IMG/VR virus record: IMGVR_UViG_3300010399_000031
Coordinates: 1-64,000 of that record
Length of the DNA stretch: 64,000 nt
Reading direction: 5' to 3' (one strand)
Shown here one piece after another: positions 21,563-30,827 of this stretch. The notes under the pieces were generated by a model, which was not told the DNA's origin, did not search any database, and saw nothing but the letters and a program-made list of their open reading frames with translations. Every line of letters begins with the position of its first letter. The first letter of the stretch is position 1. The position numbers and the translations under genes were made by a program.

Positions 21563-23194
21563 ATGAGCGCGAAACTCGATATCCCGTTCAATTTGACACT
21601 CTTGCAACTGACTCCGGCTAAGCTGCACCTGATGCGGCCGGTGAAAGTGCTTGACAGTTTCGATGGTACGGGCAGCAATTTTCATCCCGATGGGTTGTTC
21701 AGTACCGAGATTTTTGGCCGGGTCGGAGACGAGCTGCGTTCGCGCCGCTTTTCCTACATCGACATCAAGATCTCGATTTTCCACCCGATCATTTATCGCG
21801 CACTGGCGGATTTGAAACAGCTGTACATGGGCATTATCGCTGGCACTGAATATGCCGTGTTCGATGATGAGGAAAAGGACTTCGCTCGGTCGGACTCAGT
21901 GCATGGGAAAACGGGGTTTCAGTTCTTTGTCTCCAACTGGAAACGTATCGAGTGGAAGGACACCAAATCGGTATCACGTGAACACAACATCAAGCTTATT
22001 CAGATGTATCAGGATAAGTGCATGATTGACCATGTGGTGGTCTTGCCCGCTGGTTTGCGCGATATGGAGATTTTGGCAGACGGTCGCCCGCAGGAAGACG
22101 AAGTCAATTCGCTCTATCGGCGACTACTGATGGTGGCCAATACGATCAGCGACGCTTCGATTGCGCATAACCCTGAGGTGATCAACAATACGCGCTTCAC
22201 ACTTCAAAAGAGCTTCAATCAGATTTACTCGACCTACGAGGAGATGATTGCGGGTCGCCGTAAGTTGATTCAAAACCGTTGGGTCTCGCGCCGTATCTTT
22301 AACGGCACGCGAAATGTGATTACCGCAGCGGACACGGCAGTTGCGTACCTAGGTGCACCAGGTGGTATGAGTATCAACGATACGGGTGTTGGCTTGTATC
22401 AGACACTTAAGATGCTGCTACCGGTATCGAAGTATTTGCTGCGCACAAGCTTTCTATCCACGGTTTTTGTAGCAGCCGATCAACCGGCGCAATTGGTGAA
22501 CAAAAAGACTCTCAAAGCTGAACCGGTAACCCTCAAACCGACAATGTACGATCGCTGGATGACCGATGAAGGGCTTGAAAAAGTCATCGCAGCTTTTGCC
22601 CATGAGGACAATCGCCACAAACACTTGGAGTTAGAGAACCACTATCTGGGTCTGATTTACAAGGGACCCGATGGCACATTTCGTTTGATGCACGATATCG
22701 ATGAAGTGCCGCAAGGGCGCGAGAAGAAAGACGTTCACCCCCTCACCTTTTGTGAGTTGCTGTACTGCTCAACGTATTTTGCGCTCAATAAATATCCAGT
22801 CTTTGTGACGCGTTACCCGGTCACAGGAATTGGCTCGATCTATCCGTCGATGGTTTTCTGTCAGACGACGATCAAATACGAAAAGCGCCACGAGTTATCC
22901 CTCAACTGGGATCCGATGGGTGAGGAGCGTACCGCTTATCAATTTCCCATCACAGGAAGCGCATTTGTCAACACATTGATTCCTCATCCAGCTAAACTCG
23001 TGGGTCTGGGTGCTGACTTTGATGGAGATACGTGTTCAGGTAACTCGATCTACACGAAAGAAGCGGTCGATGAAGTACATCGCTTTTTACAGACCGTGCG
23101 CGCTTATGTCAACACCAATGGCGAGTTTATGGCCTCCACCTCTACCGATACGGTAGAACTCGTCTTGCACAATTTCACTGGGGTTAAAGAATGA
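21563..23194 (+). CDS. virion RNA polymerase beta' subunit (phiKZ gp180-like)
   Basis: GLFSTEIFG, RYP and the catalytic GADFDGD motif. Confidence 0.95.
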   Translation: MSAKLDIPFNLTLLQLTPAKLHLMRPVKVLDSFDGTGSNFHPDGLFSTEIFGRVGDELRSRRFSYIDIKISIFHPIIYRALADLKQLYMGIIAGTEYAVFDDEEKDFARSDSVHGKTGFQFFVSNWKRIEWKDTKSVSREHNIKLIQMYQDKCMIDHVVVLPAGLRDMEILADGRPQEDEVNSLYRRLLMVANTISDASIAHNPEVINNTRFTLQKSFNQIYSTYEEMIAGRRKLIQNRWVSRRIFNGTRNVITAADTAVAYLGAPGGMSINDTGVGLYQTLKMLLPVSKYLLRTSFLSTVFVAADQPAQLVNKKTLKAEPVTLKPTMYDRWMTDEGLEKVIAAFAHEDNRHKHLELENHYLGLIYKGPDGTFRLMHDIDEVPQGREKKDVHPLTFCELLYCSTYFALNKYPVFVTRYPVTGIGSIYPSMVFCQTTIKYEKRHELSLNWDPMGEERTAYQFPITGSAFVNTLIPHPAKLVGLGADFDGDTCSGNSIYTKEAVDEVHRFLQTVRAYVNTNGEFMASTSTDTVELVLHNFTGVKE

Positions 23195-26100
23195 TTTATT
23201 ACGACCTCTTTTTCCGTAAGTTCGGCATTCGACGTGTCGATAAGTTGCTCTCTCCGCCGCTGGCCGCGACGCGTCTGATGGAGTTACCGCTGCTTTCGAT
23301 CTACCACTATCTGGGATCGAACACCGGGGTCGATGTGGCGCCTTCCTCGAACGAATACCTCTTTCGCAACATCACGCGCTCGATCGCCATTCAACACATC
23401 ACGGAGCCAGGGGCCCGTCTTGGCTTGCCGCAAAAGCACGTGGTGAGTTGGCCCCAGGTCATTCGTCACTACCAGTCGCGCAATCGTCGTTTTCAACAAA
23501 TCAGTAAGCTCGCGCAGTATGAAAACACACCGATGACATTGGTGGTGCAAAACTACGGATTTATTCCGTTGGGGTTAAAGTACCAGCGTAACGTGCTCAG
23601 TGCGTATTACCAATGGCATAATCAGCAAGCGGCATTGTGGGATCGAGTAGCAATGTTAGCTGGTGAGAGTGTGCGTAATCAGTTTGTTAAGTTTAACTTA
23701 CCGACAACATTGCCGTCGGTGGGCGACTTGCAACAAGCACAAGCGAAGATGAATGCCACCACCATTCATCATGTCTACGAACCCGATGCTTTTGTGATCT
23801 TGGAGCTGTGGAAGTGGTTGGGCGATTACCGCTCTGAGTCGCTGCTTGCACGAGTGCCGGAAGACAAACTCTCGAAAGTGAACATCATCTTCGAGGAGTC
23901 AGGCCGCTGGTTGATGCTTAACCTGGGTTTGCTCAATAGCTGGCGCAACACCCCGAAGGTGGAGTTGACCAAACTGGCTGAAGGACAAAACCCGAACCAC
24001 TCGGGTATCGATTCGCACCAGTTGCAACGTCGTTTTCTTGGGATGCTGATGCGGCTTTTCCAAGCGCGTTCGGTTTCGAATAAGGATCTCGGAGAAGACG
24101 TCGTCAATGAGGATAGCGACGGAAAAAAATCCGACGGTAGTGAAGAAGCTACACTGACCGCTCCGGTGTCTTCGCTACCAAAGGTCAACCCGGTAACCGG
24201 CAGCACAAGCACGGCGTTGGTCGACACGCAAGTGCGCACCAACCCGCTCGACATTCTCAACCCGAATCGGGATGAGCAGCAAACGCAGACACAGCTGCAT
24301 TTGAGCGTTGAGCAAGAGCGTCAACTCGAAGCGGATCTGTTGGAGCTGGATCGTATCAGTAAGGCGGTGATTCAGCGGCGCAAAGAGATGATGGAGTTCA
24401 TGGTCGAAAACGACGAAGAACCCCTATCTGCCACGCAAGGGATGCGTTTGGGTCAGACGCAAGTATCAAACCCGATACAAGCGCCGCGTAAGCTACCCGA
24501 GCTTAAACCAATCGATCCGAAACCAGAGGTAAGTGCAACCACCCATGATTACACCTCAGGGGTGCAAAAGCTTATCGATCGGCACGCTGAGCAAGGTATG
24601 CTCTCGGCTGCTGAAGTGCGGCGTTATCAGGAATTGGCACGCAAGCATGAATCGATCACGGCGCCCGATGGTAAGGGTAGCATGAAAGATTTCGTGGTGG
24701 TGCACCCGGAGGCGGTGAAGGTAGAGGCGAAAACCATCCCGGATAAGCCGTCGATTTTCGACAAGAGCATGCTTGCCTCGACGCTACACGAGTTCACCCC
24801 GAAGTATGTGGAAAACGTGTTGCAAAAAGACGTCGCGGCGATGGTGCTGAAGATTCAAGATGCTGGCTACTGCGTGACCGATTACGAAGTCGAACATGTG
24901 GAACAGATCACGGGTGATTACGACATGTACACCTGTCGCGTGACGCCGGTGGAGGGTTCCGCATCCACACTGCGCTGGAAACTGCCGTCGGTGCGAGCCG
25001 ATGGTGTGTTTGTTGCCAATAACGTACCTTACCGGATGCGCACGCAACGCGGGGACTTGCCGATTCGAAAGATCGAAACTTCCCGCGTGGGTCTGACCTC
25101 TTACTACGGGAAAGTGTTTGTCACCCGTAGTGAAAAGAAGGTGAACGACTACGGTGACTGGCTAAGGCGTAACATCATGGCGGCTGGCTTGGACCTGGAT
25201 AACCCGCACGTCAGTGCACTTCACCCAGCTAACGTGTTTGATCATCTCTTTCAAGCACCGCGCCTTTACAGCATCTGTGCCATGGGTTTTCGCGGCTTTA
25301 CGGTGAAACCTGGTGCTTGGCCTGAGAAGGTGAAGTTCAGTAGCCTGGAGTTTAACTTTGACCACACCAAGCGTGAGCAGCTTTACGGTAAAGACGTATT
25401 AGCGCGGGTGGAAAAAGAAGGGGCGTTGATGGTGGGAACCACCGATAAGCGCGATCCGATGATCATGACCGCCGATGGTGGGATCTCGGTGATCGCCGAT
25501 GGTAAGATGATCAATCTCGCCTCGTTCGATGAGTTGTGCGGTTTTGATCCGATGAAAGCGCCGGTCGATTTTGCGGTGGTCTCGGTCTTCGGTCAGAACA
25601 TCCCGCTGGGTGTGGTGCTTGCCTACGAGATGGGACTCTCGTCTTTGCTCAAACACCTTGGGGTAGAACCCAGACGTGTTCCGGCAGGTAAGCGGGTAGG
25701 ATTAACCGGTGAAGAGTACTCGATCGCGTTTGCCGATGAGACGCTTGTGTTTCGCAAGAAAGACAAGTTGCCTGCGATTATCTTGGCAGGCTTTAACGAG
25801 TACTGGAAAGCGGTCAAGCAGTATAGCGTCTACGAGTTCGATAAGCGTGGCGTGTACCTGAATGTGTTGGAAGCATCAGGCGTTGGTTCGCGTTACCTGC
25901 GAGAAATCGATTTACTCTATCAACTCTGGGTAGATCCGATTACCCGTGAGCTGTTGGTGGAGCTGCACGAACCCACTCAGTTCCAGGACATCTTGCTGCG
26001 TGCGGCGGAGTTACTCCTTACCGATACGCACCCGCGCACGCTTGACACCTCTTACCAACGTTTTAAGGGCTATGAGCGTTTTGCAGGGGCCGTTTATACG

Positions 26101-26520
26101 GAACTTGTCAACGCGATTCGTACGCACAATGGGCGTCCGGGTAAGAGCAAGCAGCCGCTCGATTTGAACCCGTTCGAAGTCTGGAAAGCGATCTCTGAAG
26201 ACCCATCGAAGTTGACGGTCAAGGATATCAACCCGATTGAGAACTTGAAACAACAGGAGTCTGTTACCTACTCAGGAACCGGTGGACGCAATTCACGGTC
26301 GATGACGAAAAACACCCGCGCGTACGATGAGAACGACATGGGGGTAATTTCTGAATCCACGGTGGACTCGTCCGATGTGGCGGTGAACACTTACATGAGT
26401 GCGAACCCGCAGTTTGTCTCTTTGCGTGGCTTGACCAAACGCTATGATCTGCACAAAACTGGCGCTACGTCTTTGCTCTCCACCTCGGCCTTGCTCTCCG
26501 TCGCCGCTGACAAAGATGAT
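23191..26520 (+). CDS. virion RNA polymerase beta subunit (gp178-like), exon 1
   Basis: 1110 codons ending ..AADKDD; joined to exon 2 it restores DDPKRVNF (RpoB HDDANRAL equivalent). Predicted spliced product 1494 aa. Confidence 0.9.
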
Positions 26521-27913
26521 TAAAGGAATGTTGTGAATAGCAATGAAATCTACTCTTCATCCTATGTTAATCGCTTTTGGGGTGAAGACGTATGGAAAAG
26601 ATCGAACCGGTTGAATCAATTGGTTTTCCAGGTTATTACGAAATTCCGGGGTTTAGTTTTCGATACGCAATTGATCGAGAAGGACGTGTAATTAACAAAT
26701 TGACTCGGAAAGTTCTTTCTGGAAGTGTCAATTCAAAAGGTTACTGCCATTATCGATTAATTGCTAACGATCTTCTGGTCTTAACGATCGGGAGACATAG
26801 GCTCCTGGCTTTCGTATTCAAACACCCTGGTGTTTCGTTAAAAGGTCTTGTGGTTAATCACCTGAACGGGATTCCAGGAGATGATCGTTTGAATAACTTG
26901 GAATGGACAACGCACAAAGGGAACATTGAACACGCAGGTATGTTGGGTCTTACGACCAAATGCATACCGGTATCTGTTCGAGACATCGATACGGGTGTCG
27001 TTATAAAGTTTCCGAGTATCGTTGAGTGTGCTCGTCATTTTGGGGTTACCAAAGATACGATCAATTGGCGTGTAAAAGTAGGTGAGGCGAAACTGTTTCC
27101 AGATCGGAAACAATATCGAACCACACGCGCTGATGATCCGTGGATTTCCCCCGGTAATATGGTGGATGAGAAAGTTGAGTTTGGAAGATCGAGATGCATC
27201 CTACTTCGGTACTTGGATAGCGAAACGGTTGTGGTGTTTCCTCAACTCCAACAATTGGCATCGCATCTCGGTGTCTCACCCGCAACCATCACACTCTGGC
27301 TTAACCAGCCCAATCAACCAGTACTCCCTGGTTGCATCCAGATAAAATTGGCAAGTGATCAGACTCCATGGAGAACGATTGCTGATCCTCGTCTGGAACT
27401 TGAAAACTATACGGGTAAAAAATCCGTCGTGGTGACCAAGACAGCAACCGGAGAATCTAAGATCTTTGATTCAGCTGTGGAATGTGCAAGAAGCATGGGA
27501 ATATTGCCAACCACCCTGAATCTCCGACTGAAATCGAAGGGAACAAAAACTTTCTCTGATGGTTTTAGTTATTGCTACTATTCAGATATTCCAAGGTCCT
27601 ACTCGACGGTAACGTTGAGATAGAATGCTCTCTAATTGCTGGAACCCCCTTAGAGCTGATTCACCAAAGCGAAGTGCGAAAGCACAGACGTTACGGTTGG
27701 AAAACGAATCAGATTGGGCAATCAGCAGCCAAGCCTCCCTGCGCAAGCGAGAGGAAGGTTCAACGACTAACCGCTTATCACGGTGTACCTGACCAAGTGG
27801 CAGGGAAATGGGAGCCGTCCTAAATGGACGAAGATATAGTCTGGACATTCAGGGAAATCCTGAAGCAGCACGTAATGGTGCGGCCTAGAATAACGACCTA
27901 GGTGAACATCTCG
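26521..27913 (+). mobile_element. group I intron (1393 nt) with homing endonuclease ORF
   Basis: P AATTGCTGGAA 27634-44, Q AATCAGCAGCC 27720-30, R GTTCAACGACTAA 27758-70, S AAGATATAGTCT 27831-42. P3 GCTCTC/GGGAGC, P7 GACTA/TAGTC. Exon 1 ends in T, intron ends in G. Confidence 0.92.
26592..27623 (+). CDS. intron-encoded HNH homing endonuclease (NUMOD4-HNH-NUMOD1 repeats, I-HmuI-like)
   Basis: HRLLAFVF..VVNHLNGIPGDDRLNNLEWTTHKGNIEHA; three repeats FPSIVECARHFGV, FPQLQQLASHLGV, FDSAVECARSMGI. Confidence 0.9.
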   Translation: MEKIEPVESIGFPGYYEIPGFSFRYAIDREGRVINKLTRKVLSGSVNSKGYCHYRLIANDLLVLTIGRHRLLAFVFKHPGVSLKGLVVNHLNGIPGDDRLNNLEWTTHKGNIEHAGMLGLTTKCIPVSVRDIDTGVVIKFPSIVECARHFGVTKDTINWRVKVGEAKLFPDRKQYRTTRADDPWISPGNMVDEKVEFGRSRCILLRYLDSETVVVFPQLQQLASHLGVSPATITLWLNQPNQPVLPGCIQIKLASDQTPWRTIADPRLELENYTGKKSVVVTKTATGESKIFDSAVECARSMGILPTTLNLRLKSKGTKTFSDGFSYCYYSDIPRSYSTVTLR

Positions 27914-29068
27914 CCCAAGCGTGTCAACTTCATCGCCATCCAGCACGGACACGGCGTTGCCTGTGCCGGCTACCACGCCAGCGCCGTTCGCACAGGCTAT
28001 GAGCAAGTCATTGCGCATCGCACAAGCGACCTCTATGCAACGACGGCGAAAAAACCTGGTAAGGTGATTTCACTCGATGAGCGGGGGATGATTGTCGAGT
28101 ACGATGACGGCAGCAAACAAGGCATTGAGTTGGGGCGACGCTTTGGTACGGCAGAAGGCTCAACCATCCCGCACGATGTGCGCGCTGCGGTTAAACCTGG
28201 GGCGAAGTTTAAAGTCGGGGATGTACTCGCTTACAACGAGGGGTTCTTTGAACCTGACTTTATCGACCCTTCTCAGGTGGTATGGAAGCCCGGTGTCACG
28301 GTCAAAGTGGCGCTCATGGAGAGCCCTCTGACGCTGGAGGACTCTTCCGCCATTAGTGCTCCGACAGCTAACCTTTTACGCACCAAAACGACTAAAGAAC
28401 GCGAGATTATCGTGAACTTTAAGCAGACGGTGCGGGAGATGGTGAAGGTCGGTCAAGCGGTCTCGTCCGAGGATATTTTATGCGTGATCGAAGACGAAAC
28501 CACGGCACGCAACGAACTCTTTGACAAAGAGTCGCTGGACACGCTACGCGTGCTTTCAGCGCAAACGCCTCAAGCCAAAGTCAATGGCATCGTGGAGCGC
28601 ATCGAGGTGTACTATCACGGTGAAAAAGAGGATATGTCGGATTCGTTGCGGCTACTGGCCAATGCATCAGATCGGGAGTTTGCAGCGCGTCACCGCTCAG
28701 TAGGACGCACGGTGATGACAGGTCAGGCGGGCGACAGCTACCGCAGCGATGGCGATCCGCTGCTACTGGACACTCTTGCAATCAAGATTTACATCACTGC
28801 CGAGGTCCCGGCCGGGGTGGGTGATAAGGGGGTGTTTGGTAACCAGATGAAGACGGTGTTCGGAACAGTGTTGGAGCACGAGGTGACGACCGAGTCGGGT
28901 GAGAAAATCGGTGCGATCTTTGGCGCGAAGAGTATTCAAGCGCGGATCGTACACTCTCCTGATCAGATCGGAACTACGACGACCAATCTGAACCTATTGG
29001 CCGCGCGCGTGGTGCGAACCTATCACCGACAGCCGCAACCTGCGCCGCTTAAGTCGCATAAAGACTGA
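27914..29068 (+). CDS. virion RNA polymerase beta subunit (gp178-like), exon 2
   Basis: Starts PKRVNFIAIQH; contains LEDSSAIS and GVGDKGVFGNQMKTV (RpoB GDKMAGRHGNKGV equivalent). Confidence 0.9.
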   Translation, partial: PKRVNFIAIQHGHGVACAGYHASAVRTGYEQVIAHRTSDLYATTAKKPGKVISLDERGMIVEYDDGSKQGIELGRRFGTAEGSTIPHDVRAAVKPGAKFKVGDVLAYNEGFFEPDFIDPSQVVWKPGVTVKVALMESPLTLEDSSAISAPTANLLRTKTTKEREIIVNFKQTVREMVKVGQAVSSEDILCVIEDETTARNELFDKESLDTLRVLSAQTPQAKVNGIVERIEVYYHGEKEDMSDSLRLLANASDREFAARHRSVGRTVMTGQAGDSYRSDGDPLLLDTLAIKIYITAEVPAGVGDKGVFGNQMKTVFGTVLEHEVTTESGEKIGAIFGAKSIQARIVHSPDQIGTTTTNLNLLAARVVRTYHRQPQPAPLKSHKD

Positions 29069-29151
29069 CCGCATCGCTCGGGTGACGGGCAATCCTGTAA
29101 GGGGGTTGCCCGTACTCCTTATTTTTTACCAATCCTGCAATAGGACTTTCC

Positions 29152-29352
29152 ATGAAAAACCGTGAATCCGAACGGACACTGGTGACGCTGGCGAACGCGG
29201 AAGAACTCGTGGCGCTCGTGACCAAGAATGTCGTGGGTGAAGAGGTGGCTGACATGTACGACGGCACTCCGCTCACGCTCGATGTGGTGCGTCGTCTGGC
29301 TTTGGTGAAATTCCAAGGTCAACTCTCGAACTTCATCCCTGTGGGGAACTGA
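29152..29352 (+). CDS. small hypothetical protein
   Basis: AGGA RBS, 66 aa, ends 2 nt before the next gene. Confidence 0.7.
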   Translation: MKNRESERTLVTLANAEELVALVTKNVVGEEVADMYDGTPLTLDVVRRLALVKFQGQLSNFIPVGN

Positions 29353-29354
29353 AC

Positions 29355-30827
29355 ATGTTGAGTCTTAACTCTTTGAACGCGGCCATCCCGCTTGCCGAAA
29401 TTATGGACCGCAGCAACCAGATGTTGCTGCCGGTGCCGGGTACGCCGCTCGAACAACTGGTGAATGCCACGCGCAGCAACACGCAGTTTGCACTCCCGGT
29501 GAACAACAAACAAGGGGAGTTCCAACCGAGCACTTACGACATCGAATACATCGCCAACAAGCGCAGTGAGGCAGGTGTATGCGAACATGACGTGGTGCAA
29601 GATGAAATCGTCGATATGGCGGCGCGCGCAGTGCGCGGGCATTTGGTGGTGATTCGTAATGCCGTGATTCCGGCAATCGTCGAGTTGCACGATAACGTGG
29701 CCAAAGCCATGAGTGCACTGCCGGTTTCGCGTATGCTAGGAATGGAGGTGAAGATCTACGATTTGCCGCAACCGCTAAAGTCACCGGCCATCGAAAATCT
29801 CATCTCCAAGTACGAAGGAGTGCCGCACGAGTCACCGGCGCTACGCATGAAGTGTCCGGACATCCAGATGGAGGATCTGTGCGCACTCATGAAAACGAGT
29901 GCGGGTGGTTTCGACAGTGAAGTCGATAAGTGGGTCGCCGTAGAGGGTGATTCGTTTTTCCTGCAACTGTGGGAAGACGTGTTCCAGACGAAGAACAATC
30001 ACTTCGATAAGTTCAGTCAAGCGATCGACGATCGCGAGCAAGGGATCAATCGCGCTTTGGCAATCTTTCTGATTGCTCGTAAGCTCTACGAAGATCCAGT
30101 TGAGGGGATCTCCATGTCCCTGCCCTCGTTCAAATCACTCGCGGCTCAATTTCGTGATCAAGCGGCGGCTAAGATTCGCCGAGCTTTGGGTGAGTGGGAA
30201 CTCGTCAAGCGTCGTCAGCTGCTCGTGAAGAAAGTCGACGACAAGTGCATCATCGTCAACGAAGTGGTCTACCGTCCGTGGATCATGGAAGGTAAGGGCG
30301 ACAATGACGTGCTCTTTGGTAACCTCGTGAAACAAACGGGGTACACGACGGTTGAGCAGTTGACGGAAAACGCGGGTGAGTTGAAAGCGACTTGGAATCG
30401 CACCGCAGCAGCTTCGGCCACAGGCGATCGCGCCGCGCGCTTTTTGCAACTCAAAGAGCTACTCTTCTCGGAGTTTCGTAAATCGATTCACGATTTAAAG
30501 GGTGACGTTGAAGGTCCCGACACGGCTGCTCAAGAGCGAGAGGATGTCCTTCTACGCTTTAAGACCGAGTTGGCAAAGCTGCGCGACACCGATGTGGAGT
30601 CGGTCGAACAGTTTTACCCGCTGTGCCTGAAGCTCGTGTGTCGCTCGCGTTTTTACAAGGTACCCGATGCGGAGAACTTCATCTGCCAGATGATGAAGAT
30701 CGAGAAGGATAACCCCGGCATCACCCCCCGCGAAGCTTCGACGATCGCCACAGTCGACTACATTGCCGGCTGGGTAGCTGAGATGTTCAAGGTTGTGGCC
30801 GTCGGTAGTGCTGCCGCCCGACGTTAA
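29355..30827 (+). CDS. phiKZ gp177-like core protein
   Basis: 490 aa; synteny between vRNAP beta and the head protease. Confidence 0.65.
   Translation: MLSLNSLNAAIPLAEIMDRSNQMLLPVPGTPLEQLVNATRSNTQFALPVNNKQGEFQPSTYDIEYIANKRSEAGVCEHDVVQDEIVDMAARAVRGHLVVIRNAVIPAIVELHDNVAKAMSALPVSRMLGMEVKIYDLPQPLKSPAIENLISKYEGVPHESPALRMKCPDIQMEDLCALMKTSAGGFDSEVDKWVAVEGDSFFLQLWEDVFQTKNNHFDKFSQAIDDREQGINRALAIFLIARKLYEDPVEGISMSLPSFKSLAAQFRDQAAAKIRRALGEWELVKRRQLLVKKVDDKCIIVNEVVYRPWIMEGKGDNDVLFGNLVKQTGYTTVEQLTENAGELKATWNRTAAASATGDRAARFLQLKELLFSEFRKSIHDLKGDVEGPDTAAQEREDVLLRFKTELAKLRDTDVESVEQFYPLCLKLVCRSRFYKVPDAENFICQMMKIEKDNPGITPREASTIATVDYIAGWVAEMFKVVAVGSAAARR

What the first reader, a model, noticed from the sequence alone, without database searches (positions are those of the whole stretch)
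26521..27913. Intact group I intron with HNH endonuclease splitting the virion RNAP beta gene
Seen: exon 1 ends GAT-GAT then TAA, and the intron ends ..CATCTCG before CCC-AAG. Splicing restores DKDD/PKRVNF in frame. All four core elements (P, Q, R, S), plus P2 (CTCGACG-GTAA-CGTTGAG, overlapping the endonuclease's last codons), P3, P7, P8 and P9 lie 3' of the ORF, so the ORF occupies the 5' (P1-P2) region. Known from memory: the phiPA3 intron endonuclease gp210 cuts the intron-less phiKZ gp178 gene and mediates phage-phage interference. Inference: a similar weapon against co-infecting relatives. I could not place the internal guide sequence with confidence.
Basis: partly seen in the sequence, partly recalled or inferred. 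Interest (0 to 1): 0.6.

Follow-up and report, generated by a model that had tools for sequence, protein, structure and literature searches.

The report
HNH-bearing group I intron in phage RNAP
A soil jumbo phage carries a structurally intact self-splicing group I intron, with its own HNH homing endonuclease, at the same codon of the virion RNA polymerase beta gene as the published PhiPA3 gp210 "weapon" intron, so it is a new member of a known kind.

Summary
Window 26521-27913 (1393 nt) is a group I intron (Rfam RF00028, 70.5 bits, E 7e-16). It follows U26520 and ends in G27913. It splits the orthologue of the phiKZ gp178 virion RNAP beta gene right after two conserved Asp codons.

Intron-less relatives read ADKDD|PKRVNFI without a break. 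A roughly 82%-identical phage in a rhizosphere run skips the intron exactly.

The 343-aa ORF (26592-27623) is an I-HmuI-like HNH/NUMOD endonuclease. It is 44% identical over its full length to PhiPA3 gp210, and the catalytic His is kept.

It is an invariant GUC (27596-27598), just 5' of P2, that pairs with exon GAU. An extended P1 (26518-26532 with 27585-27598) covaries across 11 same-site introns (p<1e-5). The ORF therefore sits in the P1 loop.

A conserved hairpin buries the ORF's ribosome-binding site.

About 13-18% of the best 120 relatives are interrupted at or near this site. The closest relatives are not.

Splicing, nicking and interference are inferred, because no RNA data exist.

Verdict: real, intact, a new member of a known kind, of moderate interest.

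The parts
23191..26520 (+). Exon 1 of the virion RNAP beta gene (1110 codons, ending ...A-A-D-K-D-D). The in-frame TAA that follows is the first three bases of the intron.
   Evidence: Matches PHROG 3148 positions 1-1050 of 1424, E 0. 65% aa identity to Burkholderia phage FLC9 and Ralstonia phage RP12, and 47-49% to phiKZ-like phages.
26521..27913 (+). Group I intron, subgroup IA type, 1393 nt. U26520 precedes the 5' splice site and G27913 is the terminal (omega) G.
   Evidence: Rfam RF00028 at 70.5 bits. The boundaries are fixed by intron-less homologues and by an intron-less contig in run X4.
26518..26532 (+). P1 5' strand. Exon G-A-U (26518-20), then the splice site, then U26521, an internal loop AAA (26522-24), and the P1 extension GGAAUGUU (26525-32).
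   Evidence: Duplex prediction and a cross-pairing covariation test on 11 same-site introns.
26554..26588 (+). Hairpin whose 3' arm holds the ribosome-binding site of the endonuclease ORF. Arms are 26554-62 and 26580-88 (9 bp). The loop begins with TATG at 26563-66.
   Evidence: RNAfold gives -15.7 kcal/mol, z -2.5. An equivalent hairpin, with a different sequence, is present in all 10 ORF-bearing relatives. The TATG motif is compared with the phiKZ late-promoter consensus (PMC7598289).
26592..27623 (+). Intron ORF of 343 aa: an I-HmuI-like HNH homing endonuclease with NUMOD1 and HTH DNA-binding modules. The catalytic His is H90.
   Evidence: Pfam HNH_3 and NUMOD1 both above their cut-offs. 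PHROG 59. 44% identity to PhiPA3 gp210, and 45-53% to other same-site ORFs. PDB 1U3E (I-HmuI) at E 5.8e-5.
27585..27598 (+). P1 3' strand. 27585-92 pairs with 26525-32. AA (27593-94) is the internal loop. G27595 pairs with U26521. The internal guide sequence G27596-U27597-C27598 pairs with exon U26520-A26519-G26518.
   Evidence: GUC is invariant in all 11 same-site introns and always lies 1-3 nt 5' of P2. Cognate duplexes average -7.0 kcal/mol against -3.0 for non-cognate ones, with 0 of 100,000 permutations as good.
27602..27619 (+). P2 hairpin (7 bp, GUAA tetraloop), inside the last codons of the ORF.
   Evidence: RNAalifold shows compensatory changes at every variable pair, and most relatives have GNRA loops.
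27627..27865 (+). Catalytic core.
- P3: 27627-32 / 27810-15
- P4: 27637-42 / 27722-27
- P5: 27647-49 / 27716-18
- P5a: 27656-61 / 27706-12
- P6 and P6a: 27728-37 / 27751-59
- P7: about 27765-69 / 27837-41
- P7.1: 27770-73 / 27781-84
- P7.2: 27788-94 / 27799-804
- P8: 27816-20 / 27826-30
- P9: 27848-53 / 27859-64
   Evidence: Rfam alignment. RNAalifold on 8 cores gives 68 pairs, 44 of them with compensatory changes. Coordinates were mapped. P7 and P9 were read directly from the sequence.
27868..27913 (+). Peripheral 3' region. P9.1 is 27868-71 / 27878-81 and P9.2 is 27884-88 / 27898-902. The tail UGAACAUCUCG ends in the omega G at 27913.
   Evidence: Both hairpins covary among relatives. A G precedes exon 2 in all same-site introns.
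27914..29068 (+). Exon 2 of the virion RNAP beta gene (PKRVNFIAIQ..., 384 codons plus stop).
   Evidence: Matches PHROG 3148 positions 1051-1422, E 5e-154. tblastn hits abut the exon 1 hits in intron-less phages.

Best explanation
**What it is.** This is a mobile group I intron of subgroup IA type (P7.1 and P7.2 are present). It sits in the gene for the beta subunit of the virion-packaged RNA polymerase of a soil jumbo phage. That phage is related to Burkholderia phage FLC9 and Ralstonia phage RP12.

**Splicing (inferred).** In the pre-mRNA, the last three exon bases GAU (26518-20) pair with the guide GUC (27596-98). This gives the U-G wobble pair at the splice site. An 8-bp extension (26525-32 with 27585-92) closes P1 around a loop of about 1050 nt that holds the endonuclease gene. 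The core P3-P9 then folds. Guanosine attacks after U26520. The freed exon attacks after G27913. The result is one reading frame, ...ADKDD-PKRVNF..., for an essential polymerase subunit.

**The endonuclease (inferred).** The intron ORF encodes an I-HmuI/gp210-type HNH nicking endonuclease. It should recognise the uninterrupted DD-PKR site in related phages, nick it, and so drive gene conversion (homing). As shown for PhiPA3 gp210, the same nick could cripple production of the virion polymerase in a co-infecting intron-less relative. Translation of the ORF is probably held back by a conserved hairpin that buries its ribosome-binding site.

**Shown here:**
- the sequence anatomy;
- homology;
- covariation;
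- exact boundaries;
- natural intron-less alleles.

**Inferred:**
- splicing;
- nicking;
- homing;
- interference;
- timing of expression.
For: - **Ribozyme match.** Rfam RF00028 matches at full length, 70.5 bits. This is comparable to the same-site introns of the cultured phages PhiPA3 (67.8), HPP-Temi (70.5) and 201phi2-1 (87.4).
- **Covariation in the core.** RNAalifold finds 68 pairs, 44 with compensatory changes, across 8 relatives.
- **P1 and guide sequence.** P1 is supported by the invariant GUC and by covariation, with 0 of 100,000 permutations as good.
- **Splice-site bases.** U at -1 and G at the 3' end occur in all same-site introns.
- **Boundaries.** They are confirmed by profile continuity 1050|1051, by abutting tblastn hits, by 92 full-length relatives, by intron-less DNA alleles L105-L107, and by the X4 contig joint.
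- **Endonuclease.** Pfam HNH_3 and NUMOD1 are both above their cut-offs. It is 44% identical over 325 aa to gp210, with H82 matched by H90, and it resembles I-HmuI, PDB 1U3E.
- **Published precedent.** gp210 nicks phiKZ gp178 and lowers phiKZ yield 3.7-fold in co-infection (PMC11620839).
- **Co-occurrence.** Run X4 holds 100%-identical pieces of this phage, including its exon-intron junction. It also holds an intron-less relative about 82% identical.
- **RBS hairpin.** It is present in all 10 ORF-bearing relatives.
Against: - No RNA run holds this phage, so splicing is unobserved.
- The exon part of P1 is only 3 bp, and I found no convincing P10.
- Rfam's own alignment upstream of P3 is poor.
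- The recognition sequence and activity of the endonuclease are untested.
- At 44% identity, its specificity may differ from that of gp210.
- In PhiPA3, interference needed import of gp210 into the rival's phage nucleus. Nothing is known about that here, and I did not check whether this genome encodes a nuclear shell protein.
- The closest intron-less relatives differ from the window at the third positions of the Asp codons (GAC for GAT). This could affect cleavage in either direction.
Confidence: 0.8

Rival explanations
1. The element is purely selfish. The intron splices and the endonuclease homes into intron-less alleles, but it gives the carrier phage no measurable competitive advantage. 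This differs from the best explanation only in the 'weapon' part.
For: The distribution is patchy. About 15-22 of the 120 best relatives are interrupted at or near the site, and all the closest relatives (66-78% identity) are intron-less. That pattern is what horizontal homing alone predicts. In PhiPA3 the advantage appeared only in co-infection with mixed nuclei.
Against: The homologous gp210 does reduce a rival's progeny. An intron-less relative shares a sample with this phage, so the opportunity exists.
Confidence: 0.35
2. The ribozyme still splices, but the endonuclease is inactive or retargeted. It would be a decaying passenger that no longer cuts the DD-PKR site.
For: ORF-less derivatives of the same intron exist: HPP-Temi at 348 nt, 201phi2-1 at 336 nt (which keeps a remnant of the ORF's 3' end), and L113. 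ORF loss is therefore common in this family.
Against: The ORF is full length at 343 aa with no frame breaks. More than 100 columns are invariant in the three-way alignment, including the HNH motif residues. Pfam HNH_3 and NUMOD1 are above their cut-offs. The regulatory hairpin and the ribosome-binding site are kept.
Confidence: 0.12
3. The intron is dead and the gene is expressed as two polypeptides. Exon 1 would stop at TAA 26521 and exon 2 would start at GTG 27902. The two pieces would assemble as a split beta subunit, as split RNAP genes in jumbo phages do.
For: Jumbo-phage RNAP subunits are naturally split (PMC7598289). An in-frame GTG lies 12 nt before exon 2. GenBank annotates PhiPA3 gp211 and gp209 as separate genes.
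Against: - All core helices are intact and covary, which is not expected of a dead intron.
- The equivalent triplet 12 nt upstream is CTG in 5 of 11 relatives.
- No ribosome-binding site precedes 27902.
- The split would fall between conserved catalytic-region residues that are contiguous in 92 relatives.
Confidence: 0.05

Closest known systems
Pseudomonas phage PhiPA3 gp210 intron (Birkholz et al., Science 2024; PMC11620839)
   Same: - Same host gene, the orthologue of phiKZ gp178 vRNAP beta.
- Same insertion point, after the two conserved Asp codons.
- Same order: ORF first, then ribozyme core.
- The ribozyme core is about 74-75% identical in DNA.
- The endonuclease is 44% identical over its full length and keeps the catalytic His.
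- Same GUC guide, P2 with a GNRA loop, and RBS hairpin.
   Different: - The carrier phage is a different lineage: a soil metagenome phage nearest to Burkholderia and Ralstonia jumbo phages, with only 47-49% aa identity in the exons to the Pseudomonas phages.
- The P1 extension has a different sequence.
- The hairpin loop has TATG where PhiPA3 has AATG.
- No functional data exist for this copy.
ORF-less same-site introns of Pseudomonas phages 201phi2-1 (gp273/274) and HPP-Temi
   Same: Same site, same core, same GUC guide and same P2.
   Different: They have lost the endonuclease ORF and are 336 and 348 nt long. The window copy keeps a complete ORF in the P1 loop.
I-HmuI and I-BasI introns of Bacillus phages SPO1/SP82 and Bastille (nicking HNH endonucleases in group I introns of DNA polymerase genes)
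   Same: The endonuclease architecture is the same, HNH plus NUMOD/HTH. PDB 1U3E matches at E 5.8e-5 and Pfam I-HmuI_NUMOD-like gives a sub-threshold hit. All are phage group I introns in an essential polymerase gene.
   Different: The host gene and target site differ. The sequence relationship is distant, about 30% over the HNH domain only.
T4 td intron / I-TevI expression control
   Same: The ribosome-binding site of the intron endonuclease is buried in a hairpin of the precursor RNA. A late-promoter-like motif sits where a transcript start would leave out the 5' arm of the hairpin.
   Different: I-TevI is a GIY-YIG enzyme and its ORF lies in a different loop. Here the promoter idea rests only on a 4-nt motif and is untested.

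Membership tests
Group I intron (Rfam RF00028), subgroup IA type | Conserved core P3-P9 with the P, Q, R and S elements | tested here: met
   Full-length model match at 70.5 bits against a gathering score of 50. 68 consensus pairs, 44 with compensatory changes.
Group I intron (Rfam RF00028), subgroup IA type | P1 formed by the 5' exon end and an internal guide sequence, with a U-G wobble pair at the splice site | tested here: met
   U26520 pairs with G27596. GUC is invariant in 11 same-site introns. The P1 extension covaries, with 0 of 100,000 permutations as good. This is structure prediction only, not chemical probing.
Group I intron (Rfam RF00028), subgroup IA type | Terminal guanosine (omega G) at the 3' splice site | tested here: met
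   G27913. A G stands at this position in all same-site relatives.
Group I intron (Rfam RF00028), subgroup IA type | P7.1 and P7.2 hairpins between the P7 5' strand and the P3 3' strand (subgroup IA) | tested here: met
   27770-84 and 27788-804, both covarying.
Group I intron (Rfam RF00028), subgroup IA type | P10 pairing between the guide region and the start of exon 2 | tested here: inconclusive
   At most 1-2 bp can be drawn in the window (G27595 with C27914). No consistent P10 appears across relatives (reading).
Group I intron (Rfam RF00028), subgroup IA type | Guanosine-dependent self-splicing | not testable with these tools
   No RNA run holds this phage.
gp210 / I-HmuI-type HNH intron homing endonuclease | HNH catalytic motif with the general-base His (gp210 H82, whose H82R mutant is dead) | tested here: met
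   Pfam HNH_3 at 26.4 bits against a cut-off of 24.8. H90 aligns with gp210 H82 and with the D-H of I-HmuI.
gp210 / I-HmuI-type HNH intron homing endonuclease | C-terminal NUMOD/HTH DNA-binding modules | tested here: met
   NUMOD1 at 33.8 bits against a cut-off of 22.8. There are sub-threshold I-HmuI_NUMOD-like, HTH_36 and I-TevI_DNA-bd hits. The internal repeat of the module is visible in BLASTP.
gp210 / I-HmuI-type HNH intron homing endonuclease | Encoded inside the intron at the DD site of the vRNAP beta gene | tested here: met
gp210 / I-HmuI-type HNH intron homing endonuclease | Site-specific nicking of the intron-less allele; interference with a co-infecting phage | not testable with these tools
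   Only the precedent in PMC11620839 and co-occurrence with an intron-less relative.
Chimallivirus virion RNAP beta subunit (phiKZ gp178 orthologue) | Full-length homology to gp178 / 201phi2-1 gp273-274, and synteny with the gp180-like gene upstream | tested here: met
   PHROG 3148 is covered 1-1422 by the two exons. tblastn hits fall on PHIKZ178. The same 540-aa upstream gene is present in relatives.
Chimallivirus virion RNAP beta subunit (phiKZ gp178 orthologue) | Packaged in the virion | not testable with these tools
   Known only for the orthologues: mass-spectrometry notes in the 201phi2-1 record, and vRNAP as stated in PMC11620839.

The most novel reading that the evidence does not exclude
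gp210-type introns share a built-in timing switch. The ribosome-binding site of the endonuclease is locked in a hairpin in transcripts that read through from the polymerase gene. A late-promoter-like [T/A/C]ATG sits at the junction of the 5' arm and the loop (TATG 26563-66 here, compared with the phiKZ late consensus T-3 A T G+1). It would start late transcripts that lack the 5' arm and so free the site. The endonuclease would then be made only late in infection. That parallels T4 I-TevI control, but arises in a different phage family and uses the phage's own non-virion RNAP. Combined with the co-occurrence of intron-plus and intron-less relatives in soil, this would make the element a regulated inter-phage weapon that is widespread beyond Pseudomonas phages.
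Probability: 0.25. Interest if true: 0.55.

Novelty: new member of a known kind. Interest (0 to 1): 0.4.

Why it matters
- **Reach of the gp210 intron.** The only intron endonuclease shown to give a virus a competitive edge (PhiPA3 gp210) is not a Pseudomonas-phage oddity. Homologous HNH-bearing introns occupy the same codon of the virion polymerase gene in soil jumbo phages of the Burkholderia/Ralstonia-type lineage. Roughly one in six of the nearest 120 homologues is interrupted at or near this site.
- **A candidate natural conflict pair.** An intron-less relative shares a sample with this carrier.
- **An RNA model to test.** The analysis gives the family a concrete structure: a GUC guide, an extended P1 with the ORF in its loop, and a hairpin over the ribosome-binding site. 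Each feature can be tested directly. The model explains why the C-terminal tails of these endonucleases are not conserved.
- **Annotation.** Exon 1, the HNH gene and exon 2 should not be called as three independent genes.

Tried and rejected
**Guide-sequence candidates near the 5' end of the intron.** I rejected three:
- GUUGU at 26530-34 (5 weak pairs);
- GUUAA in the hairpin loop at 26566-70;
- the conserved UAUUG/UGAAU motif of the Pseudomonas copies.

None keeps a U-G pair or a common register across relatives (reading).

**Rfam's alignment of its first hairpin to 27560-27582.** It is flagged with mismatches and treats the true P2 as an insertion. I did not use it.

**P10.** No consistent pairing was found.

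**RNA evidence.** No RNA run holds the stretch, so splicing could not be observed. The single read-laying run was used on DNA contigs.

**The search for related loci with the single ORF.** It found only partial relatives. An alignment query was needed.

**L111.** It turned out to be the same element as L006 and was left out of the covariation test.

**L027-type place for P0027.** It returned no DNA.

- Exons were searched separately by reference, and exon ends are shown only side by side.
- No structure prediction or complex prediction was run, because the family assignments were already clear.
- I did not check for a nuclear-shell (chimallin) gene.
Full report
**What the window is.** The 64-kb window is the first quarter of a 243,403-bp IMG/VR virus record. 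That record was assembled from soil metagenomes. Its nearest named relatives in this gene are Burkholderia phage FLC9 and Ralstonia phages RP12 and RP31, at 56-65% aa identity. The phiKZ-like Pseudomonas phages are at 47-49%. Related contigs of 280-490 kb occur in assemblies of Paraburkholderia isolates. This hints at the host group.

**Checking the observation.**
- Exon 1 ends GAT GAT at 26515-26520, and TAA follows.
- The intron ends ...CATCTCG at 27913, and exon 2 begins CCC AAG at 27914.
- Rfam finds one family in the whole window: a full-length group I match at 27556-27865, 70.5 bits, E 7e-16.
- PHROG 3148 (RNAP beta) is matched up to profile position 1050 by exon 1 and from 1051 by exon 2.
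- In intron-less phages the tblastn hits of the two exon ends abut to the base: RP12 40516|40515, RTH11 258764|258765, Xoo-sp14 161404|161405.

I searched the exons separately by reference. I did not build or search the joined coding sequence.

**Natural intron-less alleles.** A protein search with exon 1 returned 120 best relatives.
- 92 are full length (1360-1514 aa) and read ..DD PKRVNF.. . Five read exactly ADKDDPKRVNFI.
- 15 stop exactly after DD, as the window does.
- A few stop 3-7 residues later.
- The closest relatives (66-78% identity) are all uninterrupted.

Their DNA at the site differs from the window only at synonymous positions:

| Source | Sequence at the site |
|---|---|
| L105 / L106 | GACAAAGACGAT\|CCCAAGCGAGTC |
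| L107 | GACAAGGACGAC\|CCCAAG |
| Window | GACAAAGATGAT ... CCCAAGCGTGTC |

I laid public contigs on 25000-29500. A 111-kb contig in rhizosphere run X4, about 82% identical in the exons, skips 26517-27913 and has CGAC in between. That is GAC GAC followed directly by exon 2. The same run also holds 100%-identical pieces of the window phage, including 26412-26699 across the exon-intron junction. An intron-carrying phage and an intron-less relative therefore occur in one sample.

**The same intron elsewhere.** The core is about 74-79% identical in DNA to introns at the same codon in Pseudomonas phages PhiPA3, HPP-Temi and 201phi2-1. More same-site copies came from viral and metagenome contigs: L006 (the same element as L111), L013, L094, L095, L096, L097, L098, L112 and L113.
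- All follow GAY GAU. All but L095 begin with U; L095 begins with C.
- All whose 3' end could be read end in G before the codon for P, M or G of xKR.NF. L095's exon 2 is divergent and its 3' junction is less certain. L097 and L098 hold only the 5' part.
- HPP-Temi (348 nt), 201phi2-1 (336 nt) and L113 lack the ORF.
- 201phi2-1 still keeps the last 40 nt or so of the PhiPA3-type ORF.

**The endonuclease.** ORF 26592-27623 (343 aa) matches several models:
- Pfam HNH_3 and NUMOD1, both above their cut-offs, plus sub-threshold I-HmuI-NUMOD-like and HTH hits;
- PHROG 59;
- the I-HmuI crystal structure sequence 1U3E.

It is 44% identical over 325 residues to PhiPA3 gp210 (E 3e-93). It is 45% identical to the L006 ORF and 53% to L094. 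His90 aligns with gp210 His82, whose H82R change abolishes nicking. The C-terminal 12 residues or so are not conserved among homologues. That fits the finding below that this stretch is dictated by RNA structure.

**Ribozyme structure.** RNAalifold on eight cores gives 68 pairs, 44 of them with compensatory changes. It covers P2, P3, P4, P5/P5a, P6, P7.1, P7.2, P8, P9.1 and P9.2. Window coordinates are listed under parts. P7.1 and P7.2 place the intron in subgroup IA. Every relative has a 7-8 bp stem of different sequence there, mostly with a GNRA loop.

**The guide sequence.** In all 11 same-site introns an invariant GUC lies 1-3 nt 5' of P2. This holds even though it falls in different reading frames of the ORF. 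In the window it is 27596-27598.
- GUC pairs with the invariant exon end GAU, which gives the U26520-G27596 wobble pair.
- The next base, G27595, pairs with intron base 1.
- After a small internal loop (usually 3 x 2 nt), the first 14 intron bases or so pair with the bases just 5' of the guide. In the window this is GGAAUGUU (26525-32) with 27585-92.
- L112 has GGAAAUUG/CAAUUUCC. L113 has GUUUAUUAA/UUAAUAAAC. L013 has AUGGAUA/UAUCCAU.

In an all-against-all duplex test of these variable strands, cognate pairs average -7.0 kcal/mol and non-cognate pairs -3.0. Seven of 11 cognates are the best in their row. None of 100,000 permutations does as well (an earlier nine-sequence version is).

P1 therefore closes around everything from 26533 to 27584. 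The ORF lies in the P1 loop. Its last codons run through the 3' strand of P1 and through P2. In the ORF-less L113 and HPP-Temi the same helix closes a loop of only 20-35 nt. I found no convincing P10.

**Control of the ORF.** In all ten ORF-bearing copies, a hairpin just upstream of the start codon carries the purine-rich ribosome-binding site in its 3' arm. The arm sequences differ between copies. In the window the arms are 26554-62 and 26580-88, at -15.7 kcal/mol.

A [T/A/C]ATG sits at the boundary of the 5' arm and the loop in nine of the ten. It is TATG in six of them, including the window at 26563-66. The phiKZ late promoter consensus is T-3 A T G+1 (PMC7598289). A start there would omit the 5' arm and free the ribosome-binding site. 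This is a hypothesis only. The motif is short, PhiPA3 itself has AATG, and the promoters of this phage are unknown.

**Mechanism and comparison.** The best reading has three parts:
- the intron is a self-splicing IA-type intron that restores an essential polymerase gene;
- it carries a gp210/I-HmuI-type nicking homing endonuclease;
- that endonuclease targets the uninterrupted DD-PKR site of relatives.

For PhiPA3, published work shows nicking of phiKZ gp178, escape mutations in the second Asp codon, loss of virion assembly, and a 3.7-fold drop in phiKZ yield in co-infection (PMC11620839; review PMC12908238). The window copy meets every sequence-level criterion of that family. Activity, import into a rival's phage nucleus and any fitness effect remain untested.

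Rivals are scored in their own section. They are a purely selfish element, a decayed endonuclease, and a dead intron with a split gene.

**Verdict.** It is a new member of a known kind, in a different phage lineage and habitat. Two modest additions come from this work:
- the P1/guide architecture with the ORF in the P1 loop;
- the conserved hairpin over the ribosome-binding site.

Interest is 0.4.

Noticed in passing
Same genome, outside the window: G000 about 88,860-90,120 (L007; ORF 88897-89814, Rfam hit 89785-90086): A second group I intron (92.2 bits) has the same layout, an HNH ORF followed by the ribozyme core. It splits another RNAP beta-like gene: PHROG 3295 is matched to position 403 by the upstream piece and from 404 by the downstream piece. 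This is probably the non-virion polymerase. The phage therefore carries HNH introns in two RNAP beta genes.
   Followed up: partly
Same genome, outside the window: G000 102605-103516 and 157133-157358: A third HNH paralogue (31% identity to the window ORF, PHROG 59) has no strong group I match next to it. Elsewhere there is a weak group I match (26 bits, below the cut-off).
   Followed up: no
L094 3508-4245 (metagenome contig JFJP01037707.1): The same-site intron in this relative is 2152 nt long. It holds a second ORF of 245 aa inserted after the P4/P5 5' strands. The only hit is a sub-threshold one to DUF559 (Vsr-like endonuclease fold). This may be a two-ORF intron.
   Followed up: partly
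Proteins P0014, P0052, P0074, P0085, P0091, P0098: Some exon-1-length relatives end 3-7 residues after the DD (DDPKRV, DDPKRVN, DDQQVV, DDYYGPINQ, DEGKRVNT). This suggests other insertions a few codons downstream. The stretch may be a hot spot for mobile elements.
   Followed up: no
window 27902-27913: An in-frame GTG 12 nt before the 3' splice site lets ORF finders extend exon 2 into the intron (MNIS-PKRVNF). The equivalent triplet is GTG or TTG in some relatives and CTG in five of eleven, so it belongs to the conserved UGRA tail of the ribozyme and is not a start codon. It explains why such genes are annotated as separate CDSs.
   Followed up: yes
window 26533-26552, with the equivalent positions in relatives: A conserved U(G/U)AAUAG...GAAAU/GAAGU motif sits at the distal end of the P1 extension in almost all copies, including the ORF-less ones. 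Its role is unexplained. It could be a tertiary contact, or part of a promoter.
   Followed up: no
L006 = L111 (GCA_900996245.1 contig CAAJGK010000011.1, 286 kb); P0048, P0053, P0056: Relatives of this jumbo phage are present as 280-490 kb contigs in assemblies of cultured Paraburkholderia strains. One of them carries the same-site HNH intron. This gives a host hint, and possibly a carrier state.
   Followed up: no
Place for P0027, gene at 847-1503 of that place: In one relative a GIY-YIG/NUMOD3-like ORF (faint hits) sits two genes upstream of the vRNAP beta gene. It may be another homing endonuclease in the same polymerase gene cluster. No DNA was available.
   Followed up: no
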